From positions 152,044 through 216,043 of IMG/VR virus record IMGVR_UViG_3300032236_001859: DNA of 64,000 nucleotides. One strand, given 5' to 3'. Shown piece after piece: positions 9,508 through 45,087 of this stretch. The notes below the pieces were generated by a model. The model saw nothing but the letters and a program-made list of their open reading frames with translations, was not told the DNA's origin and ran no database searches. Both the position numbers and the translations under genes were made by a program. Within the stretch, counting starts at the first letter, position 1; every line of letters begins with the position of its first letter.

Positions 9508-9535
9508 AGTCTCGACGGGGTTCACTGAGCGTCAA
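9508..9535 (-). promoter_or_regulatory. Promoter TTGACG-N16-GAGACT with internal GTGAAC
   Basis: Overlaps the methyltransferase stop codon, upstream of the 293-aa gene. Confidence 0.45.
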
Positions 9536-31236: not shown

Positions 31237-31431
31237 TCAGAACCCTGACCCCGCAGCGGCATCCCTTGCCGCTGCCCAGGCCACGGCATCAAAGGTGACC
31301 AGGACATTTGGTTGTGAGGCAAATCTGACTACGACTTTGTCGGTGCCATACGGCATCCACATAATGGCTTCTCGCACGTTATACGTGGAACCACCGACAA
31401 CAGGGGTAAAGAAATTATCTGTGAAAGCCAT
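31237..31431 (-). CDS. 64-aa stand-alone copy of the repeated beta module
   Basis: YNVREAIMW....VVVRF...VTFDAVAWAAA; start overlaps the stop of the 1122-aa gene. Confidence 0.6.
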   Translation of the reverse strand: MAFTDNFFTPVVGGSTYNVREAIMWMPYGTDKVVVRFASQPNVLVTFDAVAWAAARDAAAGSGF

Positions 31432-34400
31432 TATGACCTCGACTTCGACGCCTGCATGGCGGTCTCAAAGGCGTTGAGATCAAACCCGACGTTGACATCT
31501 GCGGCATCGGCGAAGCGAACCAGCGCAGGGGTACTCCGGTTCCATGTCGCCACCCAATCCAAGTTATAGTACACGCTACCACCACCGGGATTCCACCAGG
31601 GCATCCCAGATGGCAGCGCGGCCAGGAAAGTTGCACGCGCAATACGAATAGGCGGATTCACTGCACACTGGGGGTCTTCCGCCATCGCAGAGGACGCCAT
31701 CCAGACATCAACATAACCCAGGGCGGGGTAGTCGACATAGCGCTGAACAAAGATAACATTGAGTGTGGTCTGCCCCACGATTAGATCTGGCAACGCCGCA
31801 GCGATCGCTGGGCTTCCAAGTAAAGTAGGGCTACTTGATCTCGAGAAATCCCATTGGGTCAAGAAAGCGCTGCGACTCAGCGTTATAGGCGAATATGGGC
31901 TTCCGAAGAAAATCGCAGTAATGGTTTGTGTGTCATCTTTGAACGAGACAACCCAACGGAGATCATAGACGGCACCACCACTGGTCTGGAGTTCGTGTGG
32001 GCTCCCAAAGATCACGTTGTGGTTGTCGCCTTTGTCCTTGATGCCACTACGCGCATACACCGGGCTACCCGTGCTTGCATCACACCAGGCCACACCGAGT
32101 GAAGAATTACCCTTGATATAACTACTCGAGCTCGCACCAGACCTACTTACCAGATTCCACACACTCGCAGGCTGGAGATCTACACCTTCAATCTTGATCT
32201 GCCCGCCCCGCAAGGTGGCCCCTGCGAGATGCAGCAGTGCCGCCGATGTCAGGGTGAGCGCACCGTAGGCGTCGAGAACCCCGGCATTGAGGTCCACACT
32301 GGATCCCGCAAGCGCCGTGAAGGCCCCCGTGGTCAAGACGACATCATTGTATAGATCGAGAATCGTGCCGGCGCCAGAAACCAGAATGGAAGGGAATGCA
32401 GCGGGGAGCCCGCCGCTGACTTGAAACTGCTGGCGGACCCCACCAGTGAAATCAACTCTGGGGACCCCATTGGAGACCACGGTGACGTTAGCCCCAATTA
32501 CGAGCTTCCCAGTGAACTTTGCTAGGGATACGCCTACACCAGTGTTGGGTGCAGCCGCGATGCCCCAGCGAGTTGTGCCCCCGGTACGCCCCAGGGTGAC
32601 ATCGCCATAAGTGATATCGACGACATCCGCGTTTCCGACTGGGTAATCAAATAAGTAATCGCTACCAGCTCCGGCGACATACGTGTACGTGAAACTGGAG
32701 ATATTGGCGACGACTCCTCCACGTGCCTGGATCTGAATGACTTTGTTGCCTGATGTCCGCTTGGCAATGAGACCTGCGATATTCACGGTGCCGGGACCAA
32801 CGAACTGACAGTCAAGGTTCGCTGCGGAACCCGTGGATTCAACGGTGAGTCCACCTGCTAAGTTGACGCTCCCATTAAACGTGAGTCTGCATAGATTTGT
32901 CCATATACCCTTGAGAGTCATGGGCGCCGTGAAGACGTGGCCAGAAGGCACGGAATAAAGCGTGTTTCCGCTGGGCCCCTCTCGGAACTCAATTGGGCAC
33001 GTGAACACAACTGCAGTGGGTGCCGGCAACGGAGTCGACTTCAGGGTGTCAAGGATCAATGTGGATGCCCCGGCTATCGTACTCGAATCACCCGATATTA
33101 ACGTGGGATAGCTCGAGCCTCCACCGAGTAATCGTAGATTACCTGAGGCCAGCGTGAGTGTGACATTGGTACCCAAGGTAATACTAAGAAGATTCGTACC
33201 GGGGCCTGCCACTGTGATGGTCATCAGCTTCTCGGTACCGCCCATATTTAACACTGTGGAGTAGTTACATACCAACCGAGATGGGATCTTTTGAGAATCC
33301 GTAGCACTGAAGACTACTGTGGCCCCCACACAATCCACAGTCAGGATACCACCCCAGCTATTACTGACATCGGTCGCAGTAAACTTGGAAAGATCAAACG
33401 TGTAGTTGTCTCTGCGTAGTGTGACGTTCTGACTGGCGAGATTCAGGGTCAACCCAGTTTCAACAACCGTAAGTGTGAATGCCCAGACGAGCGCAGAATC
33501 AACGCGGAGACCGAGAACCTTGGAGCCCAGGGTGAGGTCTCCGGTACCGGTAGGGGAATCGCCGCCGATGGCGAAGTAGTGGTTTGTGTTCAGACCGCTG
33601 GCCGTGAGCCCACCAGCAAACGTGTTGGCCCCGGTGACATGGAATCCATTGGCGGTAGCCAATGTGTTCGCAGTGGGCTGGGATACGCAAGACAGCCCTG
33701 CGGAGTACCCGATCTCGCTGCCAATGATGCCCGACAAGTTGACCCGGCATCCCGCACTGATCGACATGATTCTGAACGTGCGAGTCCCCGCACCATTGAG
33801 CAGAGTTGTCGCACCGGTGAAATTCACCGTGCTCTGACCATTGACGTAGAGGTCAACTGTACCCCCGACTTCAATGGCACCACTGAACGTGAAATTCGTA
33901 TTGACCCCAGCCGGCATCGAGAGCGTGGAGGTCGTGTTCCCGATACCCAGGGCCATATTGGTGGCAAAGGTTCGAGTGGTCCCCGCAGTGATATACCAGT
34001 TGAAATAGGAGCCCTCGTAGAGGGACATCTTTCCGGTTCCAAATGAATGTGTGGTCGTCGCCCCGGAATAACTCAGAGAGAGCTGGACCCCTGCTGCGAC
34101 TATCGTGTTCCGGTGAGCCGGGAACGTCGTCGAGCTCGAATGGGTGTAGGTACCACCGTTGACATAGATGTCGTAGTTTCCAGTGACACTGCCTGTCGTG
34201 GTCAAGAACCCCGAACTCGTATTATCGATCGTAAAGTTTGTCTTGAGACGTAGCGGCGCCGAGATCGTAACAGTGTTTGAACCCGAGACCTGGTAGTAGC
34301 GTGAGATCGAGAGGTTACCCCCATTCGATGTCGCCAGGGTCTTCCCACCACTGGAGTCACTGGTGATAGTCAGGATCGTGGTATCCGCGTAAAACGTGAA

Positions 34401-34799
34401 TACCTTGGTACCCGAGTTGGTGATATGAAGAGTGGTAATGACTTGTTCTGCGAAATTATAGGTCGCCGTGGATTCGATGACCCAGCGCCCCGTGGCACCA
34501 TTTAAGGTCATCTCGTTGGAGAGCGCCAGCGCGGTGACCCCTGAAGCCATGACAGCGAAATCAAATGTGGCCAGACTGAGGGTGCCCGTGTAGCCCGTGA
34601 ACACAGCGGTATTCACGGTGAGGTTCGCACTCAACGTGCACGCCGCGTTGTGACCAGTACCACTGCCATCAAAACGGATGTCGTCGGCGGCTAGAGACCC
34701 CGCGGCAGCCGCAGTGGTCCCCCCGATGTCCGTGGTGTAGTTCTGACGCTTATTCGCGTCGGAGTCACCGACTTTGTTGTGCCAGTAAAGAGTGGCCAT
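31431..34799 (-). CDS. 1122-aa beta-helix virion/tail spike protein with three C-terminal repeat modules
   Basis: MATLYW start, T/G/S-rich parallel beta-helix composition, three ~55-aa modules at the end. Confidence 0.65.
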   Translation of the reverse strand: MATLYWHNKVGDSDANKRQNYTTDIGGTTAAAAGSLAADDIRFDGSGTGHNAACTLSANLTVNTAVFTGYTGTLSLATFDFAVMASGVTALALSNEMTLNGATGRWVIESTATYNFAEQVITTLHITNSGTKVFTFYADTTILTITSDSSGGKTLATSNGGNLSISRYYQVSGSNTVTISAPLRLKTNFTIDNTSSGFLTTTGSVTGNYDIYVNGGTYTHSSSTTFPAHRNTIVAAGVQLSLSYSGATTTHSFGTGKMSLYEGSYFNWYITAGTTRTFATNMALGIGNTTSTLSMPAGVNTNFTFSGAIEVGGTVDLYVNGQSTVNFTGATTLLNGAGTRTFRIMSISAGCRVNLSGIIGSEIGYSAGLSCVSQPTANTLATANGFHVTGANTFAGGLTASGLNTNHYFAIGGDSPTGTGDLTLGSKVLGLRVDSALVWAFTLTVVETGLTLNLASQNVTLRRDNYTFDLSKFTATDVSNSWGGILTVDCVGATVVFSATDSQKIPSRLVCNYSTVLNMGGTEKLMTITVAGPGTNLLSITLGTNVTLTLASGNLRLLGGGSSYPTLISGDSSTIAGASTLILDTLKSTPLPAPTAVVFTCPIEFREGPSGNTLYSVPSGHVFTAPMTLKGIWTNLCRLTFNGSVNLAGGLTVESTGSAANLDCQFVGPGTVNIAGLIAKRTSGNKVIQIQARGGVVANISSFTYTYVAGAGSDYLFDYPVGNADVVDITYGDVTLGRTGGTTRWGIAAAPNTGVGVSLAKFTGKLVIGANVTVVSNGVPRVDFTGGVRQQFQVSGGLPAAFPSILVSGAGTILDLYNDVVLTTGAFTALAGSSVDLNAGVLDAYGALTLTSAALLHLAGATLRGGQIKIEGVDLQPASVWNLVSRSGASSSSYIKGNSSLGVAWCDASTGSPVYARSGIKDKGDNHNVIFGSPHELQTSGGAVYDLRWVVSFKDDTQTITAIFFGSPYSPITLSRSAFLTQWDFSRSSSPTLLGSPAIAAALPDLIVGQTTLNVIFVQRYVDYPALGYVDVWMASSAMAEDPQCAVNPPIRIARATFLAALPSGMPWWNPGGGSVYYNLDWVATWNRSTPALVRFADAADVNVGFDLNAFETAMQASKSRS

Positions 34800-35492: not shown

Positions 35493-35945
35493 CTACTTGG
35501 TCAGCGCGGTGTCCACGAGGGCATCCATCAGGGAATCCCAGTCGGGGTACTTGATCAGGCTGGGTTCAATGCTGGGGCCTCCAGCGGTCAATGAGGACGC
35601 GGGATCCAGGGAGGCCATGAGATCGAGGCGGACACCCCTGACGTACTCGGCGAGGAAATCGTATTTGTCGACGAGCTCGGCTTCGGCCTGGGCGAGTTCC
35701 CCGACGGCATACCAGGCGTGTCTGGCGTAACCCAGCCTGGCCTCGACGAGGAGGGCGCGTGCACTGCCGACGTGCTTGCGCGCACAGTCCAGGCATGTCG
35801 GCCTATTGGCGAGCTCAGACTTGATCTGCTCGATTCCAGCATCGAAGTCGACGGGGGCTGGCTTGACGCCGAACTCGACCTCCATGGTACGCGTGCGAAG
35901 CAGTGGGGTCGAGTCCTTGGTGGTGTCTGGATCGGTTTGCGACAT
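35493..35945 (-). CDS. Hypothetical CxxC protein
   Basis: TCLDCARKH...LGY..H...AVGELAQAE helical protein; AGGAG RBS. Confidence 0.6.
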   Translation of the reverse strand: MSQTDPDTTKDSTPLLRTRTMEVEFGVKPAPVDFDAGIEQIKSELANRPTCLDCARKHVGSARALLVEARLGYARHAWYAVGELAQAEAELVDKYDFLAEYVRGVRLDLMASLDPASSLTAGGPSIEPSLIKYPDWDSLMDALVDTALTK

Positions 35946-35955
35946 GGGTGGGCTC

Positions 35956-37455
35956 CTAGAATTGTTTCATGCGTGGATTCCTGGCGTGGCAAGCCTTGCA
36001 CACCAGCGGCAACCCTTGGAGGCCGATGGCATCGTAGCCCCCTCTGGCAACCCTCGTCTTATTCACTCGCCAATTCGACAGGATGTCTGCCGGGGTATCC
36101 CTAAGGACATTCCCGGCCTGTATGGTGTTCTTGAAGTCCGCACAGCAATGAATCACGGTGCCATCGTTTCGGACGATTAACTCGTGGTCCTGCCGATGAC
36201 AGATCCCGAAGTCACCTGGACCCACGTTATCGGGGAGATCCTTGTGCTCGCGCCTGAGATCCAACCCAGACTCCCGGATCACGATGTGCGAATAGGTTTT
36301 CCTTAACTCCCGTGCCGCAGCGGCGTCCTCATGTGAGTACGCGCTCCAAACGACCTCATCGAAGTCGGCTAGATAACTTGCCTTCTCTGGATCCCTGGGT
36401 ATCAGCTTACCATTGGTCCACAAGTTGAACTTAACTGGTAGCATGCGTTGCTTAATTTTACCAATGGTCTCCAGTACCTTGTCTAATTCTAACAGGGGTT
36501 CGTTATAGAAGTGAAAGGCGATGTGCCCCCGGAACCCCTGGGTGACCATGTAGGCAGCGAACTCCACAATGCTCTCAGGGGTCAACGCAGTGGCCTGGGG
36601 GTCACGTGGGATCTCATTGATGGGACACCGGGAATGAACCCCTGCGAGATTGCAAGTAGTCCCGACCTCAAAGCACAGGTATCTGATCTCCGCGGGGCTC
36701 CAGAGCTGCCAGCGCCGCCCATTGATCGGTGGCTCGATGACCACTGGTGGCGGAACAGGAAGGAGGTCAACACGGGGGTCATGTTTGATCAAGGGTTCCT
36801 GGGGATGCCACCACATGACCTCTGACCACGTACGCCCAATCGTGGATCTCAGGGTCCCCTGCGCCGCGATGTGCTTGCGGACCCCATAGAACCTATGGGT
36901 ACGGTGGAATCCCCTGAGAACTTGATCTGGACTCCTCGCATTCCGCGTCATCTCGATGTAGATCTCAGCCAACTTGGACACCTTGTAGAGGATGCAATGC
37001 GTTCTCACGGCACCACGGACCACGACGAGGTCGTCAGTGAGCGCTGCAGGTGGTACCTGGTGCTCACCACCACAGTAGAGCCCATAGGCGTCTGAGGGAA
37101 CCCTGGGGAGTACATCTGACAGTACGGTGAGGAAATCCGGGGAGAACACACAGTCATCCTCAATGAGCAGCGCCCACTTGGCATCAGACATCATCATGGA
37201 CTCATACGCCATGAGGTGGCTGACATAGCACCCGAAGTCCCCTGGGCGATTGAACCATTCAGGCGGCAACTTCGGCCGCATCAAGGATTGGTCAAAACCG
37301 TAGAAGGGGGGAAGCCAGTCAGATGGGATGACTGCCTTGTCGGCTTCACGACGGAAAACCTCGAGCCGATCTGGGGTACGCCGCAGCGTCAGGACGCCTC
37401 GCCAACCCACCGCTTGTGTCAAGTAATCCAGGGAACGCTCTGGTGCAGACATCAC
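35956..37455 (-). CDS. GT25-like glycosyltransferase fused to radical-SAM/SPASM-like domain
   Basis: FGCYVSHL and LIEDD (GT25); CNLAGVHSRCP, FYNEPLL, LWTNG (radical-SAM-like); C..LIVRNDG.VIHCC..GNV...CKAC (SPASM). Confidence 0.75.
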   Translation of the reverse strand: MMSAPERSLDYLTQAVGWRGVLTLRRTPDRLEVFRREADKAVIPSDWLPPFYGFDQSLMRPKLPPEWFNRPGDFGCYVSHLMAYESMMMSDAKWALLIEDDCVFSPDFLTVLSDVLPRVPSDAYGLYCGGEHQVPPAALTDDLVVVRGAVRTHCILYKVSKLAEIYIEMTRNARSPDQVLRGFHRTHRFYGVRKHIAAQGTLRSTIGRTWSEVMWWHPQEPLIKHDPRVDLLPVPPPVVIEPPINGRRWQLWSPAEIRYLCFEVGTTCNLAGVHSRCPINEIPRDPQATALTPESIVEFAAYMVTQGFRGHIAFHFYNEPLLELDKVLETIGKIKQRMLPVKFNLWTNGKLIPRDPEKASYLADFDEVVWSAYSHEDAAAARELRKTYSHIVIRESGLDLRREHKDLPDNVGPGDFGICHRQDHELIVRNDGTVIHCCADFKNTIQAGNVLRDTPADILSNWRVNKTRVARGGYDAIGLQGLPLVCKACHARNPRMKQF

Positions 37456-37459
37456 GGGG

Positions 37460-39889
37460 TTACCTCGTCATGAAAGTGTAGGGGCCGACACCATCCCGGA
37501 AGTCCCAGGCCGAGCCGACCAGTGTCATCGTTGGCGGTGTCTTGGGGTCTCCTGCCTCGCGAGCCTTCGCCGCGGGATCAAAGTACCACCAGGGGAGTTC
37601 GACGAAATCTTTGGCGCGGATGTTTCCTGAGAGCACGGAGTCCAGGGCTAGATCAACGGTCTCCTTGGCTTTGATCCTGGCCTTGCAGGAGTCAGCCCAG
37701 GCCTCGATGGTAACTGAGCCATAGGCTGCACCGACAACCCTGGATCGAACCTTACCATCGAAGTCCTTGAATCCAAAGGCACCAGCACCAATGGCGCAGA
37801 GTGCACTGGGGTCACGTATGACTTCGACGTCGGCATCGATGCAGAGGCCCCCGACGCCCATGCGGAGTGCTGCTGGCTTCGCGATCTCGTTGAGGACATC
37901 GTGTGGCAACTCGGCGACAGTGACGCCTAGATCGTCTTCATAAAAACTGGTGACCATCGTGGCGGTCTCCGGGGTGTCCTGCCACAGGTTGACATCCCAG
38001 CCCAGGGACTCCAGCAACTCGATGTTCTTGGCAACCGTGGCGGCGACTTCACCCTCGATCTTGGTGCCGATGGCCATGATGTGGATAATCTTGGGGATCG
38101 TGGCCTCATCTGCAGTCGGGGGATCCAGGGGCTCTAAATCGAAGCCCTCGAGATCGGAGAACCCCCCGGCCTGTTTGAGCAGCCTGAGGTACAAGCGTTC
38201 CTGTGGGGTATAGGTGCCCGTGGCGGGTTCCCCCCAGTACCGAATACGCTTGGGTTCAATCTTGGGTGCGATGTGGGTGTCGATGCCTGTGGTCACAATG
38301 GTATCAGCCCAAGTGCGAGCCCATCGAATGGCCTCGGCTCCAGTGGATAGCCCCCAGGTCTCGTGGACCACCGGGGGTTGCAGGCGACGCTTGGCGTAGG
38401 CGGGATCCCAGACATCTGGCTTGTTCGCACTGATGTGGCGCAGCCGTGAGAGCACCTCGGCGTAGCGGGCACCCTGCGCGGGGTTCTCGAGCACCCTGGG
38501 TTGGATGAGGACGACTCTCCAGGGCTTCAGCATGGCCAGACCGATCTCGAGGTCTTCCAGGGCGCGGGGATGCTGAGGGTTCAGTACCCAGTAGTCGGTG
38601 CGGTCCCCGACGGGGTAGCCATCGAGGCGTGGGAAGTTGATTCGGATGACGACGTCATCGGATCGCATGCCGTCATCCCGCCAGCCCTCACCTGCATTGG
38701 CAGTGGATCCATTGCCAACAATGAATGCACGTCGGCTACCATCATGCTTGTCGGTGTCTATCTTGAGGGGGCGTGTGGTCGCCGGGATATTCCAGGCCCC
38801 ATTACGAGGCGGGATCCCCGCGGCGGCCAGCGCTTTGTCCTCGAGTTCGACGAGGCGTTCAGTGGACTTCCCAGCGGGGGCGACTGCGAGCTCAGCGGTA
38901 TAGGCGTCCCAGGCCGCCTTGACCTCGGCGATACCGAGACCAGCGGAGTAGCCCCAGGCGAGATCCCGCAAAGAATCTGTTAGTATAGGGGGTGCTATTC
39001 GAGGTTGTGTGGGCTTCGCGGGCTCCTTGAAGTGGCCATCATAGAGCCCAGCCGAGGACTCCCTGGGGTTCACCTTGGAGTCATTGGTGGCCTGGGCCCG
39101 GGCATCGATGAAGGACTTATAGGGGAACGCGGTGAGCCCAGAGATCTGGGTGGTATTGAATACCTCGAATCCATGGTGAAGGAACTCGACCTGGAGCTGG
39201 GTGAACAATCCATTGAGGTACTCGAAGAGTGTGTTGTTCTTGTCGGCGACTGTGGCATCGACGACCTGATCATGGTTGTACGCCTTCTTGGGATCCATCT
39301 TGAAGTCAGCACCGATGAGGTAGACCCTCTTGAACCCCAGGATGTAGAGGATCCGCATCGCGGCGACCATGGTGCTCCGACCACCCCTGCGGTGATCATC
39401 GCCTTCCTGGCCCCAGTTGATGGTATCCTCATGTAACCAGGTCTTGGCATCAAACTTGTCATTGCGCCGGATGAACCAGGTGTTCGGGCAATCCTTGGGG
39501 GTCCGCACGGGGTGGTCCCGTAACGGCATGTCCTGATAGGCCAGAGGATAGAACTTCTGGATACCGGGATCCAGCCAGATCGAGTTCAGGAAGCGATGGG
39601 GTTCATCGAGGCCACACCAGAGCTGGGGACGCCAGCCCTGGGCAGCATTGTTGACCGCCATCGTGATGATCCCAGGCGTCGTTGAGAGCGCTTTGAGATC
39701 AATGGCACCTGCGCTGGGGCCGCCACAGACCAAGAATGCAGTGGCGCCAGCGTAGGCGTGTCCCAACCAGGCGTTCTCCATCTGTGATGTAAAGAACACG
39801 GCGGGCTGGGAACGCAGGATGCGCCCAGCCCGGGCTTCAGTTGCCGTGATGATGTTGAAGGCATCGTGACGCCCGGGGTGGGTGGTCAT
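37460..39889 (-). CDS. Triple-domain glycosyltransferase: DUF115/Maf-like + GT29 sialyltransferase-like + GT32 (DxD)
   Basis: FLVCGGPS..TMAVNNA..LGFKRVYLIGAD; AFIVGNG..DVVIRIN...VGDRTD (sialylmotif L-like) and LSTG..TTGID (sialylmotif S-like); IPKIIH..GGLCIDADV. Confidence 0.75.
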   Translation of the reverse strand: MTTHPGRHDAFNIITATEARAGRILRSQPAVFFTSQMENAWLGHAYAGATAFLVCGGPSAGAIDLKALSTTPGIITMAVNNAAQGWRPQLWCGLDEPHRFLNSIWLDPGIQKFYPLAYQDMPLRDHPVRTPKDCPNTWFIRRNDKFDAKTWLHEDTINWGQEGDDHRRGGRSTMVAAMRILYILGFKRVYLIGADFKMDPKKAYNHDQVVDATVADKNNTLFEYLNGLFTQLQVEFLHHGFEVFNTTQISGLTAFPYKSFIDARAQATNDSKVNPRESSAGLYDGHFKEPAKPTQPRIAPPILTDSLRDLAWGYSAGLGIAEVKAAWDAYTAELAVAPAGKSTERLVELEDKALAAAGIPPRNGAWNIPATTRPLKIDTDKHDGSRRAFIVGNGSTANAGEGWRDDGMRSDDVVIRINFPRLDGYPVGDRTDYWVLNPQHPRALEDLEIGLAMLKPWRVVLIQPRVLENPAQGARYAEVLSRLRHISANKPDVWDPAYAKRRLQPPVVHETWGLSTGAEAIRWARTWADTIVTTGIDTHIAPKIEPKRIRYWGEPATGTYTPQERLYLRLLKQAGGFSDLEGFDLEPLDPPTADEATIPKIIHIMAIGTKIEGEVAATVAKNIELLESLGWDVNLWQDTPETATMVTSFYEDDLGVTVAELPHDVLNEIAKPAALRMGVGGLCIDADVEVIRDPSALCAIGAGAFGFKDFDGKVRSRVVGAAYGSVTIEAWADSCKARIKAKETVDLALDSVLSGNIRAKDFVELPWWYFDPAAKAREAGDPKTPPTMTLVGSAWDFRDGVGPYTFMTR

Positions 39890-39891
39890 GC

Positions 39892-40203
39892 TTAACTCCT
39901 GCGAGTCTTTTTCTTCTTGGCGTGCTCACGACGAGCCCGCGCCTTGATGATACCGCTGCGCTCCCTGAGGAGCTTGAGCTGACGGTTCTGCTCAGCGGTA
40001 CGTGCGGCGACAATGCGTTGCCGGCGCAGTGCCCTGGCCTTCTCCAGGGCTTCATCGCGGCTGCCGGGGTGATCCCCTGTGGCCTTCTCATAGGCCATGC
40101 GTTCCTCGGGGGTCAGGATCCCAGGTGTGGCCTCGGGCTTCTCAGGGGTACCGACCACAGATGCCGTCGCGGCATCAATGACTGCTTTGAGATCAGTGCT
40201 CAT
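39892..40203 (-). CDS. Small hypothetical protein with basic C-terminus
   Basis: 103 aa, ATGA coupling. Confidence 0.55.
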   Translation of the reverse strand: MSTDLKAVIDAATASVVGTPEKPEATPGILTPEERMAYEKATGDHPGSRDEALEKARALRRQRIVAARTAEQNRQLKLLRERSGIIKARARREHAKKKKTRRS

Positions 40204-40799
40204 GCCTTCCCTTTCTTCTTCGCCTTGGACTTGGACTTGGACTTCACAGTCTCGACGCTGGAGACTGTCTTGACCTTGGCCTTCAAGGTGCCGCCAGGTG
40301 TGGCCTTTTTCTTCAACACCTTTTTACCCAACTCGGCCTCGCGTGCCTGGAGAGCTGCGATCAACTGGCGTGGGGCAGCAAGAAAGTTGGGGTCATTTAG
40401 ACTCGTAAATGTGTACCCAGCCTCTTTCAGCTTCTCAGATGCAACACGGAATACACGGAAATCCCCCACAACCGCAACATCGATGTCACGTGACAGGCCA
40501 TCACCTGCCTTAACGGTGCGCCACGCTGAAGCCGGGAGAGTACGCGCGCGACGAATGATGGGGTCCCCTTCTTTCACCTCGGGTGCACCGCGTGTACCAA
40601 CTACCACCGGACCCTCACCAGGGATCAGGTACAGAAGGCGAGACTTGGCCTTCTGGAAGACATCCCCAAGACTGTTGGGTGCATTCATATGGGTGATCTC
40701 AAGATTGGCTATCCCCATGACGATGCTGAATAGAGCGTCGATCTCTTTCAGGCGCTCGAAGTTGGCATTGGGGTTGCAGGATTTGGAACATTTCGACAT
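40200..40799 (-). CDS. Hypothetical protein with Lys-rich tail
   Basis: Start re-called at MSKCSK after an AGGAG RBS. Confidence 0.6.
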   Translation of the reverse strand: MSKCSKSCNPNANFERLKEIDALFSIVMGIANLEITHMNAPNSLGDVFQKAKSRLLYLIPGEGPVVVGTRGAPEVKEGDPIIRRARTLPASAWRTVKAGDGLSRDIDVAVVGDFRVFRVASEKLKEAGYTFTSLNDPNFLAAPRQLIAALQAREAELGKKVLKKKATPGGTLKAKVKTVSSVETVKSKSKSKAKKKGKA

Positions 40800-40867
40800 A
40801 TAGTCTCCTCTGGGCGTTAGCCCATGTGGGTGGGTTGACTCACAGTAAACCATGACTCTCAGCGGTG

Positions 40868-41131
40868 TCAAGTCGGATGGGTGTCTGGGATGTCAGCGAT
40901 GGAGGCCTGAGTCCGCGTGATACCGCCAGTGGCCACAACAAACAAGTTCTGGACATATTCAGTGGATGCGCGCTCCTTGAACTCCTGTGGGGTGATCCCT
41001 GAGGTCAACGCGATCTGCAAGATGGTGCTTCGCAATGCAGCGGCGGCCTGAAGCAGCTCAGTCGAGTTGTTGATCACGTTCTGAATCTCTACGGGGAGCT
41101 TGGGTGCCGCGGGTAGTGGTGTGTAATCCAT
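40868..41131 (-). CDS. Small hypothetical protein
   Basis: Start re-called at MDYTPL after an AAGGA RBS. Confidence 0.5.
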   Translation of the reverse strand: MDYTPLPAAPKLPVEIQNVINNSTELLQAAAALRSTILQIALTSGITPQEFKERASTEYVQNLFVVATGGITRTQASIADIPDTHPT

Positions 41132-41141
41132 GGTGGTATCC

Positions 41142-42881
41142 TTAATCGATGGGTTTGAGGTTGAAGCGCTGGAGGACACCCCCAATGCTTGTGGTACGTG
41201 GAACTCTAAGAGCCCAGTACCCGGCGAGAAGGCGCTCCCTGTACCGCAGGGGCTGCACGGCGAGTGGGCACCGCCCCAAGGCCACCACGGGCACCCCAAT
41301 CATGGCGGCTTCGACAAGGGAGGTCGAATTGATGCCGACGACGACTTCACTGATACGCGCGGCTTCATAGAAGTCTTTGATGGTGTCGCGGTTCTCGATG
41401 GTGGCCCGTGCGGACTTCCAGGGTCTCTGGGATCCCGACTTGGGGTGGGGGCGGACCACGATGTCATGGCTGGGATACATCGCGGAGACATGTTCAATAA
41501 ACTCGCCCATGTTGCGGTAAGGGCAATGATACAAGATCTGGGAGTCGTTCTCGATCTGGAGGGGTACGAGGACGCGTCCCTTCTTGGGTTCCAGAGGATA
41601 CTTGGTACGGAGTTCGACAACACCCTCACGGTACGCCTTGAGGTCGGCGTCACCAACCCAGCCCAGTGGTCGCATCAGCATGGAGTCCCCAGCGAAGCCA
41701 TCGAGGTCAACGAGGAATGTTGTCGCCTGGGGGGCCACACCCCACTCGAAGAAGGCATAGGGGATCTTCATGGCCTCACAGAGCGCCTTGGCGTTGCGAC
41801 CATTGTGCTGGGCCCCATTCCAGATGACCACAAACGAGGCCCGCTTGAGATCACCGGCGACCTTGAAGAACTCGGTGTCGATGCCGATGAAGGCGTAGGG
41901 GCGCCCCAGGGACTCCGCCCAGCGCTTCACGAAGCCCTGACACTCACTCCCATTCCACCCGATATAAACAATGGCGCCGTCGTCGGCACGCCTGCCGGGG
42001 GCCTCCTCGGGCTCACAGTCGCCCTGGGGGACCTCGTGGAGGGTTTCCTTGCCCGGCCAGGGATCCATGGGGGCCAAGACGGCATCGGAGGCGCGGACCT
42101 CGTAGCCCAGGGTGGCCCGGGCATACGCCGAGGTGAGTTCGCGCGCAATCCGCTCAGTCCACTTCGAGGCATCGACATCAGCCTGAGTATCCCGGGCATG
42201 GAGAACGGCGATCCCGGCGTGGTGGAGGTAGAACCGCTGCGGTGCCATCCATGGACTCAGGGGTTCCTCGGTGATCCCCGTGGTCTGCCTGCCGAGTTCC
42301 CTGTTGAGATGATTGACCTGGAAGGGGAACTCGGCGAGAACACGCTGGGCAAAGATGACATCATGGTTGCGCATGACGCCCTGGGGATACGTGATATTGG
42401 CATCGACGATGGGGGCCCTGCGGAAGAATGCGGCGTTATACCTGAGAGGAAACTTGCCCTCTAGGGATTGCCGGGTTACCGTGTAGTCACCCCAGGACAC
42501 CGCGTTGCGAGCCACGGCTTCATTAGCCTTGAGTTCATGAGTCCACAGCACGATGTCGGGGTTCTTCTCGGCCTCCTGTTCGAGGACGGCGACACGGACT
42601 TCTTCGGAGAAATCCCTGTCACCGTGCACCAAGATGAAGTCAGCACTTGAGCGTGCGATGAGGAAGTTGAGGGCGGCGCCGGCACCAATACGGTGAGAAC
42701 TCGTGAAGACTTCAATTCGGGAGTCGATCCCGCGCTCCTCCTCGATGAGCTCAGTGGTCTGCGCTGTGGCGGCATCACTGAACACCAAGACGCGGTTGAC
42801 CCCGCGAATCTTGAGTATGTTCTGGAGAGTGGCCTCGATGTGGGGGTTGTCATGTGTAACCAAGACGATGTCAGTGGTCAT
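41142..42881 (-). CDS. GT2-like domain fused to KpsS/KpsC-like (capsule synthesis) domain
   Basis: IVLVTHD..VLVFSDAAT..GAGAALNFLI..ADFILVHGD (GT2 fold); LVPLQIENDSQI, VVRPHP, INSTSLVEAAMIGVPVVALG (KpsS-like). Confidence 0.75.
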   Translation of the reverse strand: MTTDIVLVTHDNPHIEATLQNILKIRGVNRVLVFSDAATAQTTELIEEERGIDSRIEVFTSSHRIGAGAALNFLIARSSADFILVHGDRDFSEEVRVAVLEQEAEKNPDIVLWTHELKANEAVARNAVSWGDYTVTRQSLEGKFPLRYNAAFFRRAPIVDANITYPQGVMRNHDVIFAQRVLAEFPFQVNHLNRELGRQTTGITEEPLSPWMAPQRFYLHHAGIAVLHARDTQADVDASKWTERIARELTSAYARATLGYEVRASDAVLAPMDPWPGKETLHEVPQGDCEPEEAPGRRADDGAIVYIGWNGSECQGFVKRWAESLGRPYAFIGIDTEFFKVAGDLKRASFVVIWNGAQHNGRNAKALCEAMKIPYAFFEWGVAPQATTFLVDLDGFAGDSMLMRPLGWVGDADLKAYREGVVELRTKYPLEPKKGRVLVPLQIENDSQILYHCPYRNMGEFIEHVSAMYPSHDIVVRPHPKSGSQRPWKSARATIENRDTIKDFYEAARISEVVVGINSTSLVEAAMIGVPVVALGRCPLAVQPLRYRERLLAGYWALRVPRTTSIGGVLQRFNLKPID

Positions 42882-43723
42882 ACCAGACCTCCGACGCCGT
42901 AGTCGACCACAGCAAAGTTGATCTCTCCTCGTGGCGCCGTGGTATCGATGCCGACACCGTGCCAGATCTCAGTGGTGACCTCGAAGGTGCCCTTGTCACC
43001 CAAGGTGATCCGTGGCCACACCGCATCAGCGATGACGACGTGGTGGCCACAGGAGGCCCCACGAAGAATGCAGGTCTTATGTGGCAACGCGGAGGCCTTG
43101 GGAGCCCCGACGACAACCCTGACGCCGGCTTCACGTGCCAGTAAAGGATTCGCGGACAGCCGGGCCTTCACGGCAGCGCTGATCATCCAGGCCTCGGGGT
43201 ACACGATGAGATCACATGCCGACTTCATCACCGAGGTGACTTGCTCACCAGGCTTACTCGCATCGAGGAGCGTGGCGCGGGAGATCACGGATTCGAGGAC
43301 CCCGAGCACCCTGGTGTCCACTGCGAAGGCCAGGGGGGTCAAGCACTCCCGGGTGTACCAGTCCCAGAACGATTCCCCCGTTTTCAGGAGATCAGCGATC
43401 GATGACTTCGCGGTCACCGGGGTACGCAGGATCGCAAACTTTACATCTCCCTTTACACCTGGCTCGACAACATTGGCGACCAAGACATCCTTGGGGTTCG
43501 CACTGAAGTGGGCCCTAGCAGCGTCGACATTGGCTGCGGGGGCCTCGAGGGCGACCCCGAAGACCTCGGCGAGGCTGCGACGACTCGGCGGCCACCACTT
43601 CATCGTGGTCGCCACGTTCTCCAACCACTCCAGGGTCCACACCCCAAGGATGGCATTGAAGGCCACGGGATCCGAGTTCACGGAGTCGAGAAGACCAGCG
43701 GGGGCACCAGTGAATGGGGTCAT
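42878..43723 (-). CDS. Divergent HK97-fold major-capsid-like protein (putative)
   Basis: Spine-helix-like VTAKSSIADLLKTGESFWDWYTRECLTPLAFAVDTRVLGVL and C-terminal EIWHGVGI...PRG resemble large-phage major capsid proteins from memory. Confidence 0.5.
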   Translation of the reverse strand: MTPFTGAPAGLLDSVNSDPVAFNAILGVWTLEWLENVATTMKWWPPSRRSLAEVFGVALEAPAANVDAARAHFSANPKDVLVANVVEPGVKGDVKFAILRTPVTAKSSIADLLKTGESFWDWYTRECLTPLAFAVDTRVLGVLESVISRATLLDASKPGEQVTSVMKSACDLIVYPEAWMISAAVKARLSANPLLAREAGVRVVVGAPKASALPHKTCILRGASCGHHVVIADAVWPRITLGDKGTFEVTTEIWHGVGIDTTAPRGEINFAVVDYGVGGLV

Positions 43724-45087
43724 GCGTTCCTCGTCAAACGGAGGCCATGGAAGACGTCAGCGAAATCGATGACGCAGGTGTAACTCAGGGTGACCTCGAG
43801 GATCCCAGACTTCGCCAGCTTGGTCTTCTCAGCCTTGGCAGCCTTGAGTTCTTTTTCCTCGGCGCATGCCTTGAGCACGGCTTCATCGAGTTCCCGTGCC
43901 TTGGCGTCATGTGCCCTGGTGACCTCCTCGGCGAACTCGGGGAGCACGGGTTCCCGTGGGGCCTTCAGGTAATCCTCGAGGGCCTGCTTGGCTGCAGCCA
44001 CAGCTATCACTGCGGTGCCATGTGCCCTCGCGGCTTCATCGGCGGCAATCCTGCCGATGTCCTTGAGACGGATGCCATAGGCCCAATGGTCTTCCTTGAA
44101 GACGCCCCCAGGCTTCTTGAACACTGCGATACCATGCGGAAGTGGCGTAGGATCCTCAACGGCGACCTGGGCTGCCTTCAGGGATTCAATGATCTCCCCG
44201 TTGGCGAGCCCAATGGCCGCGTACATCTTGGAGTCAATGAGCACGGATTCATTGTCTTGAGTCATCGCGACGAGGACGTCATCTGCTGGCTTCACGGCAT
44301 CCTTGAAGGCAATGTGGCCATCCAATGCGATGTCGAGGTAATCCGCTATACCCCTGCAGAGATGGGTAGCAAACCAGTGCCGGAATGTGACACCTTGCTC
44401 CGCGATCTCGCCGAGGTCGACGACAGCCTTGACCACGAAGATCTTAGCGTTGCCTGATGTTTCAGCGATGCCCTCGTGACCATCAATAAAATCGTGTCGT
44501 AACTTAGAAAGTTCTGTAAGAATCTCCTCTTGGATCTCTGGTTTCCAGATACGTTGGAGGCAGGAGTTCTCAAGCATCCACCATGCCGCGAACTCTCTGC
44601 AGGTCTTGAACCCCATGAGGGCGTCTTCGAGAACACTGGCGTAGAATGCAGCATTGAGCTCCCGTGCCCTCTCGGGGCCAGGACTCGCGAGTTCTACTGG
44701 GGGCACATATCGTGGGGGCGCCGAGAGCGAGTCGATGTGGGCACCAATAGCCTTCCAATCCGGTTTGGCCACGATGCCATCGAGCTCGGGATCCTTGACG
44801 TAATCCACTGTGTTAAAGGAGATATGACCATTCGCATTCCGCTTTATCAGGATCTTGCCTGCACTGGCGCGTGCCGCTGCAATGGCCTGCCTGAGTTCCA
44901 TGGTCATCGGGAGACCATCGGGTAGCGAGGCGGGGTCAACGATCTGACCTTTATCGATGACGTGGAGCCCTTTGGCCGCGATATGATTCTGCCGCCACTG
45001 CCCCAGGATCTCATTCCGTTTGTGAGCAAACGAGGACCCTAAATTGATCTCGAATCCGCCTGAGACCATGTCGCCTTCACGCAGCAT
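43720..45087 (-). CDS. Hypothetical protein, paralog of the downstream capsid-like gene
   Basis: Ungapped 37-aa similarity to 42878-43723; C-terminal coiled coil; promoter-like motif upstream. Confidence 0.55.
   Translation of the reverse strand: MLREGDMVSGGFEINLGSSFAHKRNEILGQWRQNHIAAKGLHVIDKGQIVDPASLPDGLPMTMELRQAIAAARASAGKILIKRNANGHISFNTVDYVKDPELDGIVAKPDWKAIGAHIDSLSAPPRYVPPVELASPGPERARELNAAFYASVLEDALMGFKTCREFAAWWMLENSCLQRIWKPEIQEEILTELSKLRHDFIDGHEGIAETSGNAKIFVVKAVVDLGEIAEQGVTFRHWFATHLCRGIADYLDIALDGHIAFKDAVKPADDVLVAMTQDNESVLIDSKMYAAIGLANGEIIESLKAAQVAVEDPTPLPHGIAVFKKPGGVFKEDHWAYGIRLKDIGRIAADEAARAHGTAVIAVAAAKQALEDYLKAPREPVLPEFAEEVTRAHDAKARELDEAVLKACAEEKELKAAKAEKTKLAKSGILEVTLSYTCVIDFADVFHGLRLTRNA

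What the first reader, a model, noticed from the sequence alone, without database searches (positions are those of the whole stretch)
35956..42881. Phage glycosylation island of fused transferases enriched for CMP-ulosonic-acid (sialic/pseudaminic/Kdo) type enzymes
Seen: three large fusion genes encode at least six glycosyltransferase-type domains: GT25; DUF115/Maf-like (~39050-39760); GT29-like with sialylmotif L- and S-like segments (~38150-38740); GT32 DxD (~37460-38100); GT2; and KpsS/KpsC-like. Established: GT29 uses CMP-Neu5Ac, Maf proteins transfer pseudaminic/legionaminic acids, and KpsS/KpsC transfer CMP-Kdo. Inference: the phage builds an acidic nonulosonate/Kdo glycan on its virion or on the host surface, as a shield or for superinfection exclusion. 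A GT29-type enzyme in a phage would be unusual.
Basis: partly seen in the sequence, partly recalled or inferred. Interest (0 to 1): 0.8.

Follow-up and report, generated by a model that had tools for sequence, protein, structure and literature searches.

The report
Phage sugar-transferase gene island
A large uncultured soil and freshwater phage carries a conserved block of fused sugar-transferase genes, three of whose domains resemble enzymes that add acidic Kdo or sialic-type sugars, so it probably builds an acidic glycan on a target that is still unknown.

Summary

The best-supported ulosonate-type domain is the C-half of the 579-aa protein. It aligns with the retaining beta-Kdo transferases WbbB and KpsC and keeps the QxxxD nucleophile (D446) and the HP histidine (H479).

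The GT29-like domain is real at fold and motif-L level by four weak but concordant tests. It lacks both canonical GT29 histidines (R550, Y560), so it may be non-canonical or inactive. GT29-annotated phage proteins already exist in databases.

Four related phage contigs keep the same core. Between the 809-aa gene and a conserved 150-aa gene lies a variable slot filled with different tailoring enzymes.

The only GenBank phage relative of the KpsC-like domain lies beside KdsA-, KdsB- and KdsD-type genes. No CMP-sugar synthesis gene was found in 109 kb of this 216-kb phage.

The acceptor is unknown: a virion protein is favoured weakly, and host envelope or DNA are not excluded.

This is a new variant of virus-encoded glycosylation, predicted from sequence only.

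The parts
43720..45087 (-). 455-aa gene of unknown function. It is the conserved upstream neighbour, and its stop overlaps the start of the next gene by 4 nt.
   Evidence: Syntenic in L005, L007, L008 and L010. No Pfam, PHROG or NCBIfam hit. ESM Atlas gave nothing usable.
42878..43723 (-). 281-aa gene, a possible HK97-fold (capsid-like) protein. Its stop overlaps the start of the 579-aa gene by 4 nt. It is not the main capsid protein.
   Evidence: ESM Atlas score 0.96 to Phage_capsid/HK97 clusters. The AF2 model is poor (pLDDT 52). Its top Foldseek hits are HK97 capsids and encapsulins, but E >= 0.13. No PHROG, PDB-sequence or tblastn hit. The orthologue of phage Arash's annotated major capsid protein lies elsewhere, at L014:15093-16031.
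42192..42881 (-). GT2 (GT-A fold) domain, residues 1 to about 230 of the 579-aa protein. The DxD motif is D88-x-D90.
   Evidence: PF00535, E 2.5e-6. The family profile matches TarS (5tze) at E 1.3e-12.
41142..41984 (-). Retaining beta-Kdo-transferase-like domain (KpsC/KpsS/WbbB type), residues about 300-579 of the 579-aa protein. Key residues are Q442...D446 (codon 41544-41546) and H479-P480 (41442-41447).
   Evidence: PF05159, E 2.2e-9. The family profile matches WbbB (5fa0) at E 2.1e-5 and KpsC (6mgd) at E 1e-3. In the alignment Q442/D446/H479 fall on WbbB Q228/D232/H265 with identical 33-residue spacing. These residues are invariant in 8 family members and in the LR756500.1 homologue.
40868..41131 (-). 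87-aa ORF of unknown function, conserved in position.
   Evidence: Gene call in L001. Positional counterparts occur in L005, L007, L008 and L010. No family hit.
40200..40799 (-). 199-aa ORF of unknown function with a Lys-rich C-terminal tail.
   Evidence: Gene call in L001. K+R 37 against D+E 19. No family hit.
39892..40203 (-). 103-aa ORF of unknown function, basic. Best conserved of the three small ORFs.
   Evidence: 88-95% identity to the L007 counterpart in tblastx. K+R 25 of 103 residues. No family hit.
39005..39889 (-). MptE-like/DUF115 (Maf / GT42-like) domain, residues 1-295 of the 809-aa protein. It is the most conserved domain of this protein.
   Evidence: PF01973 hits 10 of 11 family members, best E 8e-7. 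PHROG 4603 'alpha-2,3-sialyltransferase', E 8e-4. The window protein alone scores 16.1 bits against a cut-off of 34.6. The profile against PDB gave only a weak GT42-type sialyltransferase match (9c08, E 0.8).
38120..38773 (-). GT29-like (sialyltransferase-fold) domain, residues 373-590 of the 809-aa protein. Motifs L and S-like, 'YWG' and P562/E564 are present. The canonical histidines are replaced by R550 and Y560.
   Evidence: PF00777 hits 8 of 10 members, best E 3.5e-5. In ESM Atlas, 81 of 100 neighbours are PF00777 clusters. The AF2 model (pLDDT 63) has all of its nine best Foldseek PDB hits in GT29 (E 5e-3, TM 0.42). The BFVD top hits are viral sialyltransferases. The profile aligns motif L with ST3Gal-I. 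The histidine replacements are seen. phmmer against 1.8 billion representative proteins finds only its own family.
37460..38119 (-). GT32-type (Gly_transf_sug, DxD) domain, residues 591-809 of the 809-aa protein. The DxD motif is D685-x-D687. This is the most variable domain and has been swapped among relatives.
   Evidence: 31% identity (E 2e-24) to the PF04488-positive C-terminal domain of P0007. PF04488 hits 5 of 11 members. Against P0007 the identity by domain is 85%, 79%, 92% and 33%.
36802..37455 (-). GT25 domain, residues 1-218 of the 499-aa protein. It carries an EDD motif (E99-D100-D101).
   Evidence: PF01755, E 3.1e-8. PHROG 854 and 2835 'glucosyltransferase'. PDB Mimivirus R655 (9crz), E 0.007. 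49% identity to the GT25 half of a 541-aa protein in L007.
35956..36690 (-). BtrN-like radical-SAM / SPASM-twitch domain, residues 256-499 of the 499-aa protein. The auxiliary-cluster cysteines C419, C437/C438, C486 and C489 are present. The CxxxCxxC motif is absent; the cysteines there are C261, C268 and C277.
   Evidence: PF13186 SPASM, 26 bits against a cut-off of 21.5. PDB BtrN (4m7t), E 1.5e-3 over residues 263-468. Cysteine positions.
35493..35945 (-). 150-aa gene of unknown function. It is the conserved downstream boundary of the variable slot.
   Evidence: Conserved in L005, L007, L008 and L010, while the genes between it and the 809-aa gene differ in every relative.

Best explanation
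**What it is.** The island is a phage-encoded glycan-assembly module, probably cytoplasmic. It is conserved in a lineage of uncultured phages of about 170-216 kb, seen as relatives in soil, wetland and freshwater metagenomes.

**Core.** The core consists of two multidomain enzymes separated by three small basic or unknown ORFs.
- GT2 + retaining beta-Kdo-transferase-like (579 aa).
- Maf/MptE-like + GT29-like + GT32 (809 aa).

**Variable slot.** Downstream, a recombination-prone slot carries a different set of tailoring enzymes in each relative. In this window it holds GT25 fused to a BtrN-like radical-SAM domain.

**Inferred mechanism**
- The GT-A domains (GT2, GT32, GT25) add neutral sugars from UDP-type donors.
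- The KpsC/WbbB-like domain adds Kdo from CMP-Kdo. This is most likely taken from a Gram-negative host, because no synthesis genes were found. The transfer would go through a covalent Asp446 intermediate.
- The Maf-like domain attaches an ulosonic acid. By analogy with flagellin Maf enzymes it may attach it to Ser or Thr of a protein.
- The GT29-like domain lacks the canonical catalytic histidines. It may bind a CMP-sugar or the acceptor, or it may catalyse by another route.
- The product is an acidic heteroglycan whose fine structure differs between related phages.

**Acceptor.** My preferred acceptor, weakly, is a conserved virion protein.

**Shown.** Domain identities, conserved catalytic residues, synteny, the variable slot, and the Kdo-pathway association of the KpsC-like domain in another phage.

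**Inferred.** The donors, the order of steps, the acceptor and the biological role.
For: **Domain identities.**

**Catalytic residues of the KpsC/WbbB-like domain**
- The QxxxD Asp and the HP His align with WbbB D232 and H265. The roles of those residues come from PMC9587256.
- Both are invariant in the family.

**DxD-type motifs.** These are retained in the GT2, GT32 and GT25 domains.

**Synteny**
- The order [455][281][about 580][three small ORFs][about 810] is conserved in relatives with down to 34% identity.
- The slot between the 809-aa gene and the 150-aa gene differs in every relative:
  - L007: DUF5672; GT25 + DUF5672; GT25-like + Radical_SAM.
  - L008: GT29-like + GT32.
  - L010: a protein with a methyltransferase domain.
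  - L005: a pyruvyl-transferase-like protein.
- The GT32 domain itself has been swapped: 33% identity against 85-92% for the rest of the protein.

**Kdo association.** The homologue of the KpsC-like domain in the 462-kb phage LR756500.1 shares all the motifs. It lies beside genes for DAHP_synth_1 (KdsA type), CTP_transf_3 (KdsB type), SIS (KdsD/KpsF type), GT2, a pyruvyl transferase and DegT.

**Location.** No membrane-spanning segment was found in any island protein: the maximum 19-residue Kyte-Doolittle hydropathy mean is 1.6 or less.

**Supporting literature**
- Maf enzymes can transfer Kdo and Neu5Ac to Ser/Thr (bioRxiv 2020.06.03.131540; PMC11339370).
- Phage-encoded virion glycosylation has a precedent in mycobacteriophages (Freeman et al. 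2023, PMC10527164, as cited in PMC12619734).
Against: - No biochemical or expression data exist.
- The MptE-like, GT29-like and GT32 calls are below Pfam thresholds in the window protein itself.
- The GT29-like domain lacks both canonical histidines.
- The radical-SAM part lacks CxxxCxxC.
- No CMP-Kdo or nonulosonate synthesis gene was found in 109 kb of the 216-kb genome. The other half was not examined.
- The acceptor is unknown.
  - The orthologue of the annotated major capsid protein of phage Arash is about 70 kb from the island.
  - The HK97-like call for the adjacent 281-aa protein is weak.
  - The Ser/Thr-rich 1122-aa neighbour is missing or truncated in relatives that keep the island.
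- The island borders nucleotide-metabolism genes (ribonucleotide reductase) rather than a clear structural module.
Confidence: 0.45

Rival explanations
1. **Host-envelope remodelling.** The enzymes act on host lipid-linked or membrane glycoconjugates, as KpsC/KpsS, WbbB, TarS, GT25 and GT32 enzymes do in bacteria. Possible targets are the phosphatidylglycerol-Kdo linker, LPS or LOS core, O-antigen or capsule. The change to the infected cell surface would block superinfection, or would stop progeny from adsorbing to debris.
For: - All characterised relatives of the KpsC/WbbB-like, GT2 (TarS), GT25 and GT32 domains act on envelope glycans (PMC9587256).
- A variable tailoring cassette is typical of O-antigen and capsule loci.
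Against: - No flippase, polymerase, ABC exporter, GtrA/B-type or any other membrane protein lies in or beside the island.
- The phage looks lytic. It carries its own multisubunit RNA polymerase and a ribonucleotide reductase, and no integrase was seen in 109 kb.
- The Maf-like domain points to a protein acceptor.
Confidence: 0.2
2. **DNA hypermodification.** The transferases build a glycan, possibly containing Kdo, on a modified base of the phage DNA to evade restriction. This would resemble the phage 5hmC-glycan gene clusters.
For: - Phage glycosyltransferases related to LPS and teichoic-acid enzymes glycosylate 5hmC. One phage enzyme installed a Kdo-like acid sugar on DNA (bioRxiv 2023.12.21.572611).
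- The island lies near the ribonucleotide reductase gene.
- It contains two small, very basic proteins that could bind DNA.
Against: - No cytosine methyltransferase, TET/5mYOX or thymidylate-synthase-type hydroxymethylase was seen in the Pfam annotation of 109 kb.
- None of the domain families here (Maf, GT29, KpsC-like) is known to act on DNA. The reported Kdo-type DNA enzyme has a T4 beta-GT-like GT-B fold.
Confidence: 0.15
3. **Partly degenerate module.** The GT29-like domain and the radical-SAM-like domain have become non-catalytic scaffolds. The island then makes only a simple neutral glycan, or has some other role.
For: - R550 and Y560 replace the canonical GT29 histidines.
- The CxxxCxxC motif is absent.
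- The Pfam scores are below threshold.
Against: - The GT29-like domain is 74-92% identical among close relatives. It keeps about 18 invariant positions across members that are only about 27% identical, including the motif-L core.
- The KpsC-like catalytic residues are invariant.
- The reading frames are intact in five independent contigs.
Confidence: 0.15

Closest known systems
Retaining beta-Kdo transferases: WbbB N-terminal domain (GT99) and KpsC/KpsS (GT107; Pfam PF05159 Capsule_synth)
   Same: - Pfam PF05159 scores above its threshold.
- The family profile matches WbbB and KpsC.
- The QxxxD nucleophile Asp and the HP His are conserved, with spacing identical to WbbB.
   Different: - It is fused behind a TarS-like GT2 domain and is encoded by a phage.
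- Sequence identity is low.
- The general-base Glu is only inferred (E379).
- The N-terminal reduced Rossmann and helical insertion parts were not modelled.
- No lipid-acceptor or export partners (KpsMTED) are present.
Maf flagellin nonulosonic-acid glycosyltransferases / MptE-like DUF115 (PF01973) and GT42 sialyltransferases
   Same: - PF01973 hits 10 of 11 family members.
- A PHROG annotated as alpha-2,3-sialyltransferase also hits.
- The 'GGPS...NN' and 'GADF' motif regions are present.
   Different: - No flagellin genes and no flagellin-binding flanking domains.
- It sits at the N-terminus of a three-domain enzyme.
- The window protein scores below the Pfam threshold.
GT29 sialyltransferases (eukaryotic and viral; the plant member RCKT1 is a putative CMP-Kdo transferase)
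   Same: - Motif L aligns with ST3Gal-I.
- The S-like motif, 'YWG', and the Pro and Glu of motif VS are present.
- The top Foldseek hits in PDB and BFVD are GT29 enzymes.
   Different: - The His that contacts the phosphate (motif III) and the catalytic-base His (motif VS) are replaced by Arg550 and Tyr560.
- It lacks a signal anchor, so it is probably cytoplasmic.
- All scores are below significance.
- A paralogue in a related phage (L008) keeps both histidines.
Virus-encoded glycosylation clusters: mycobacteriophage virion glycosylation (Freeman et al. 2023), giant-virus fibril and capsid glycan clusters (such as Mimivirus R655), and phage 5hmC-glycan gene clusters (Pyle et al.)
   Same: - The virus carries its own set of several glycosyltransferases and sugar-tailoring enzymes.
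- The GT25 half matches Mimivirus R655 weakly.
- The gene content varies between relatives.
   Different: - It combines three CMP-ulosonate-type transferase-like domains in fused proteins.
- No sugar-nucleotide synthesis genes were found nearby.
- The acceptor is unknown.
- The host is probably Gram-negative and environmental.
Gene cluster in uncultured huge phage LR756500.1 (462 kb), unannotated
   Same: - It has a homologous KpsC-like protein with the same motifs.
- It also carries GT2 and pyruvyl-transferase genes.
   Different: - That cluster also carries KdsA-, KdsB- and KdsD-type genes, DegT and a GT4.
- It lacks the Maf/GT29-like/GT32 fusion protein.
- Its enzymes are separate proteins rather than fusions.

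Membership tests
GT99/GT107 retaining beta-Kdo transferases (PF05159) | Sequence membership: Pfam Capsule_synth score above the gathering threshold. | tested here: met
   37.6 bits against a cut-off of 20, E 2.2e-9. The family profile matches WbbB at E 2.1e-5 and KpsC at E 1e-3.
GT99/GT107 retaining beta-Kdo transferases (PF05159) | Catalytic nucleophile Asp in QxxxD (WbbB D232, KpsC D160) and the HP-motif His (WbbB H265). | tested here: met
   Q442/D446/H479 align with WbbB Q228/D232/H265 (residue roles from PMC9587256). They are invariant in 8 sequences.
GT99/GT107 retaining beta-Kdo transferases (PF05159) | General-base Glu (WbbB E158) and the modified GT-B architecture with a helical insertion. 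| tested here: inconclusive
   An invariant E379 ('EWG') lies 67 residues before D446, against 74 in WbbB, but no alignment covers it. No structure was predicted for this protein.
GT99/GT107 retaining beta-Kdo transferases (PF05159) | Transfers Kdo from CMP-beta-Kdo. | not testable with these tools
   The only evidence is indirect. The LR756500.1 homologue lies beside KdsA-, KdsB- and KdsD-type genes.
GT29 sialyltransferases (PF00777) | Pfam score above the gathering threshold. | tested here: not met
   The window protein scores 13.5 bits, or 15.5 bits for the isolated domain, against a cut-off of 23. The best family member reaches E 3.5e-5.
GT29 sialyltransferases (PF00777) | Sialylmotif L (donor-binding Rossmann segment). 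| tested here: met
   The profile aligns 'RRAxIVGNG...DDVVIRxNFPR...VGxRTDxWVLNP' with ST3Gal-I residues 95-168. The core positions are invariant.
GT29 sialyltransferases (PF00777) | Motif III His and motif VS catalytic His (pig ST3Gal-I H302 and H319; ST6Gal1 H370). | tested here: not met
   The positions hold R550 (Thr in distant members) and Y560 (Asn or Ala in distant members). The L008 paralogue has His at both (residue roles from PMC4202792).
GT29 sialyltransferases (PF00777) | GT-A variant fold shared with solved GT29 structures. | tested here: inconclusive
   The AF2 model has pLDDT 63. The nine best PDB hits are all GT29, but E is 5e-3 and TM 0.42.
Maf / MptE-like (PF01973) | Pfam membership. 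| tested here: inconclusive
   The window protein scores 16.1 bits against a cut-off of 34.6. Ten of 11 family members hit, best E 8e-7, and precomputed PF01973 hits are recorded for P0009, P0010, P0012 and P0022.
Maf / MptE-like (PF01973) | O-glycosylates Ser/Thr of a protein with a nonulosonic acid. | not testable with these tools
   No flagellin gene or other identified acceptor is present in the window.
GT32 (PF04488 Gly_transf_sug) | DxD-containing sugar-binding region. | tested here: met
   D685-x-D687 is invariant. The domain is homologous (E 2e-24) to the PF04488-positive domain of P0007. The window domain itself gets no direct Pfam hit.
GT25 (PF01755) | Pfam score above threshold, and the EDD motif. 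| tested here: met
   34.1 bits against a cut-off of 24. The sequence 'LLIEDDCVF' is present.
GT2 (PF00535) | Pfam score above threshold, and DxD. | tested here: met
   28 bits against a cut-off of 23.3. The profile matches TarS at E 1.3e-12. D88-x-D90 is present.
Radical SAM enzymes with a SPASM/twitch domain (BtrN-like) | CxxxCxxC cluster motif for SAM cleavage. | tested here: not met
   Only C261, C268 and C277 are present, spaced x6 and x8. The middle Cys of BtrN's motif is missing in the alignment.
Radical SAM enzymes with a SPASM/twitch domain (BtrN-like) | Cysteines for the auxiliary [4Fe-4S] cluster. | tested here: met
   PF13186 scores 26 bits against a cut-off of 21.5. C419 and C437/C438 align with BtrN cysteines. 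CxxC is present at C486 and C489.

The most novel reading that the evidence does not exclude
This jumbo-phage lineage would be the first bacteriophages shown to add Kdo or nonulosonic acids to their own particle, or to their DNA. The glycan would be built entirely in the cytoplasm by fused multidomain enzymes. These include a phage version of the covalent-intermediate beta-Kdo transferase and a histidine-less GT29-like domain. A cassette slot would diversify the glycan between related phages, much as O-antigen loci diversify in bacteria.
Probability: 0.3. Interest if true: 0.8.

Novelty: new variant of a known kind. Interest (0 to 1): 0.6.

Why it matters
Virus-encoded glycosylation is well documented for giant viruses, for actinobacteriophage virions and for phage DNA. 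I found no paper describing a phage-encoded Kdo transferase, a phage Maf-type enzyme or a phage GT29-like enzyme.

If the prediction holds, it would matter in four ways.
- It would show that environmental phages of probably Gram-negative hosts make acidic, host-like glycans themselves.
- The variable slot would suggest that some surface interaction drives this diversification, such as host defence, adsorption or grazing.
- It would provide new, compact, soluble multidomain transferases for ulosonic acids.
- It would provide a natural histidine-less GT29 relative, useful for studying how that fold works.

The LR756500.1 cluster suggests that complete Kdo pathways occur in other huge phages and have gone unannotated.

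Tried and rejected
**Searches that found nothing**
- DNA (megablast) search of the island and tblastn of the 809-aa protein against 50,697 GenBank phage records found nothing.
- phmmer of the GT29-like domain against 1.8 billion representative proteins found only its own family.
- The 499-aa protein has no homologue other than itself in the word-indexed search.
- A genome-contig scan with the Maf-like profile found nothing.
- Promoter and terminator scans were at chance level.
- tblastx found no similarity between phage Arash (bases 1-50,000) and the window.

**Ideas rejected**
- *The 281-aa protein as the major capsid protein.* I considered this, which would have made the island a capsid-gene neighbour, and rejected it. 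The orthologue of the annotated major capsid protein of phage Arash lies elsewhere. The 281-aa model is poor. hhalign, PHROGs and PDB sequence searches were all negative.
- *The Ser/Thr-rich 1122-aa neighbour as the acceptor.* I considered this and set it aside, because relatives that keep the island lack or truncate that gene.

**Artefact**
- The matches of residues 364-443 of the 579-aa protein to designer pentatricopeptide proteins are repeat artefacts.

**Failed or incomplete steps**
- One contig look-up failed because of a wrong start codon.
- Walking the contig covered only 109 kb of 216 kb before the look-up cap.

Full report
**Where the window comes from**

The window is the last 64 kb of a 216,043-bp IMG/VR contig, IMGVR_UViG_3300032236_001859 (also Ga0335263_1075550). 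A 180-kb Logan contig carries the same sequence. Sequencing runs that hold partial matches to the island (5-14% of sampled words, so relatives or fragments) come from soil, wetland, lake and freshwater metagenomes.

The genome is that of a tailed phage.
- It has a portal protein 27% identical to that of Salmonella phage Arash.
- It has a DUF2793 tail fibre and a ribonucleotide reductase interrupted by a LAGLIDADG intein.
- Just left of the window lies a fused multisubunit-type RNA polymerase gene.
- All likely genes in the window are on the minus strand.

**The observation**

Public gene calls agree.

Three domain calls pass Pfam's curated thresholds in the window proteins themselves:
- GT25, 34.1 bits;
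- GT2, 28 bits;
- Capsule_synth (KpsC/KpsS type), 37.6 bits.

The three domains of the 809-aa protein fall below threshold in the window protein, but the family supports them.
- PF01973 (MptE-like) hits 10 of 11 members.
- PF00777 (GT29) hits 8 of 11 members.
- PF04488 (GT32) hits 5 of 11 members.
- The window's own C-terminal domain is 31% identical (E 2e-24) to a PF04488-positive homologue.

Residues 256-499 of the 499-aa protein resemble the radical-SAM dehydrogenase BtrN (PDB 4m7t, E 1.5e-3) and pass the SPASM threshold.

**The KpsC/WbbB-like domain**

This is the strongest of the ulosonate-type calls.
- A profile of eight family members matches WbbB (5fa0, GT99) at E 2.1e-5 and KpsC (6mgd, GT107) at E 1e-3.
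- In the residue-level alignment, 'PLQIENDSQ' falls on WbbB 'VLQVEDDSN', and 'VRPHP' falls on 'VRAHP'.
- Q442, D446 and H479 therefore correspond to WbbB Q228, D232 and H265. D232 is the nucleophile that forms the Kdo adduct. H265 is the leaving-group acid (PMC9587256).
- The spacing between Asp and His is the same 33 residues in both proteins.
- All three residues are invariant in the family.

The N-half of the same protein is a GT2 GT-A domain, closest to the teichoic-acid GlcNAc transferase TarS (E 1.3e-12).

**The GT29-like domain**

Four independent tests, each weak, all point to GT29.
- Pfam PF00777 hits 8 of 10 isolated domains, best E 3.5e-5.
- In ESM Atlas, 81 of the 100 nearest clusters carry PF00777, and most of these are Uroviricota.
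- An AF2 model (pLDDT 63) has all of its nine best Foldseek PDB hits in GT29: ST8SiaIII, ST6GalNAc2 and ST6Gal1 (E 5e-3, TM 0.42). Against BFVD the top hits include poxvirus, herpesvirus and giant-virus sialyltransferases.
- A profile search aligns sialylmotif L with ST3Gal-I.

A paralogous domain in the accessory gene of a related contig (L008) is 24% identical (E 2e-8). It carries 'HYWG' and 'HSPSQE', that is, motif III and the H-x4-E of motif VS. At the same columns the conserved 809-aa family has R550 (Thr in distant members) and Y560 (Asn or Ala in distant members). In GT29 enzymes these two histidines contact the CMP phosphate and act as the catalytic base (PMC4202792).

The domain therefore looks like a GT29 relative by motif L and, more weakly, by fold, but it fails a defining catalytic feature. 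It is nevertheless well conserved, which argues against simple decay.

I found no paper on them.

**The other domains**
- The N-terminal MptE-like domain is the most conserved part of the 809-aa protein. It is 85-96% identical among close relatives and about 52% identical in distant ones.
- It also hits a PHROG annotated as alpha-2,3-sialyltransferase.
- The C-terminal GT32 domain keeps D685-x-D687 but has clearly been exchanged. Against P0007 it is 33% identical, while the other three segments are 79-92% identical.
- The GT25 domain carries an EDD motif. It is 49% identical to the GT25 half of an L007 protein that is fused to DUF5672 instead.
- The BtrN-like half keeps the four auxiliary-cluster cysteines: C419, C437/C438, C486 and C489. 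It has C261, C268 and C277 in place of CxxxCxxC. Whether it has radical-SAM chemistry is uncertain.

**Synteny and the variable slot**

Four related contigs share the same gene order. They are L007, L008 and L010, whose 281-aa orthologues are 86-91% identical to the window's, and L005, at 34-35% identity. The order is: 455-aa gene, 281-aa gene, GT2/KpsC-like gene, three small ORFs, then the three-domain gene.

All of them also share the 150-aa gene at 35493-35945. Between that gene and the three-domain gene the content differs in every contig.

| Contig | Content of the variable slot |
|---|---|
| Window | GT25 + BtrN-like |
| L007 | DUF5672; GT25 + DUF5672; GT25-like + Radical_SAM |
| L008 | GT29-like + GT32 |
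| L010 | 825-aa protein with a methyltransferase domain |
| L005 | pyruvyl-transferase-like protein plus others |

A conserved core with a cassette of tailoring enzymes is the pattern seen in loci that make surface glycans.

**The donor sugar**

I found no KdsA, KdsB, KdsD, NeuB-type or DegT gene in the window. None appeared in 109.4 kb of contiguous sequence, either in the precomputed Pfam annotation or by tblastn. About half of the genome was not examined.

The only GenBank phage record with a relative of the KpsC-like domain is the unannotated 462-kb phage LR756500.1.
- Its 332-aa homologue has the same WNG, E-x-G-x-x-PQ, QxxxD, HP and NST motifs.
- It lies in a cluster with DAHP_synth_1 (KdsA type), CTP_transf_3 (KdsB type), SIS (KdsD/KpsF type), GT2, pyruvyl transferase, methyltransferase, DegT and GT4 genes.

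This association supports Kdo as the sugar for the phage family. Two further points keep Kdo plausible for all three ulosonate-type domains. Maf enzymes can use CMP-Kdo and CMP-Neu5Ac. A plant GT29 member is a putative CMP-Kdo transferase (PMC11288761). A Gram-negative host would supply CMP-Kdo.

**The acceptor**

This remains open.
- None of the island proteins has a membrane-spanning segment. No export or flippase genes are present. This favours a cytoplasmic acceptor.
- The adjacent 281-aa protein gave an ESM Atlas score of 0.96 to HK97 capsid clusters. Its model is poor and its Foldseek hits, though mostly capsids, are not significant.
- The orthologue of Arash's annotated major capsid protein is a 312-aa gene about 26 kb left of the window, and so about 70 kb from the island.
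- The Ser/Thr-rich 1122-aa neighbour is missing or truncated in relatives that keep the island.
- The DNA rival gains some weight from a report that a phage GT-B enzyme puts a Kdo-like sugar on 5hmC, and from the two very basic small proteins in the island. No 5hmC-pathway gene was seen.

I rank the candidates as follows.

| Acceptor or reading | Probability |
|---|---|
| Conserved virion protein | about 0.35-0.4 |
| Host envelope | 0.2 |
| Phage DNA | 0.15 |
| Partly degenerate module | 0.15 |

**Verdict**

The enrichment for CMP-ulosonate-type transferase folds is real, and Kdo is the best-supported sugar. The GT29 label needs the caveat about the missing histidines. The biological purpose is unproven.

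Compared with known systems, this is a new variant of virus-encoded glycosylation. It is not a new kind of system.

Noticed in passing
window 27184-30606 (-): The ribonucleotide reductase gene is interrupted by a LAGLIDADG-type intein (1140 aa). The orthologue in relative L007 is 836 aa and lacks the insert. Its match to the window skips 28603-29550.
   Followed up: partly
L004:17613-23468 (about 2-8 kb left of window start): A 1951-aa fused RNA polymerase beta/beta'-like protein carries an intein. A separate 634-aa Rpb1_5 piece lies further left. The arrangement is syntenic with Salmonella phage Arash gp206 and gp216.
   Followed up: partly
window 11674-13761 (-): A 695-aa fusion of a NUDIX domain and a HAD-IIIA phosphatase domain, with GmhB, histidinol-phosphatase and PNK3P-like hits. 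It could act on sugar phosphates or on nucleic-acid ends.
   Followed up: no
window 42878-43723 (-) and L014:15093-16031: The phage may encode two HK97-fold proteins. One is the 312-aa orthologue of Arash's annotated major capsid protein. The other is the 281-aa protein next to the island, which has no detectable sequence similarity to the first.
   Followed up: partly
window 31431-34799 (-): A 1122-aa protein with 22.6% Ser+Thr and a composition rich in Gly, Thr, Asn and Ala. It looks like a beta-helical fibre, judged from composition only. It is present in L010 but reduced to a 185-aa C-terminal remnant in L007.
   Followed up: partly
window 780-6455 (-) and 15626-21028 (-): Two very large proteins (1891 and 1800 aa) have no family hit. 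The first follows the portal gene directly.
   Followed up: no
L016 (GCA_964421275.1, contig CAYQWE010000009.1): A cellular homologue of the Maf-like domain (P0017, 41% identity) lies in a genome with paired tubulin genes and PSCyt/PSD1/DUF1501 genes. This is typical of PVC-group bacteria and gives a possible lead to the host clade.
   Followed up: no
L017 (LR756500.1 127419-144015): An unannotated 462-kb phage carries an apparently near-complete CMP-Kdo pathway (KdsA, KdsB and KdsD/KpsF types). Beside it lie a KpsC-like transferase, GT2, GT4, a pyruvyl transferase, a methyltransferase and a DegT aminotransferase.
   Followed up: partly
window 56347-57279 (-) and 9522-10385 (-): A GNAT acetyltransferase-like protein (310 aa) and a weak spermidine-synthase-like (methyltransferase fold) protein (287 aa). 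Both lie far from the island.
   Followed up: no
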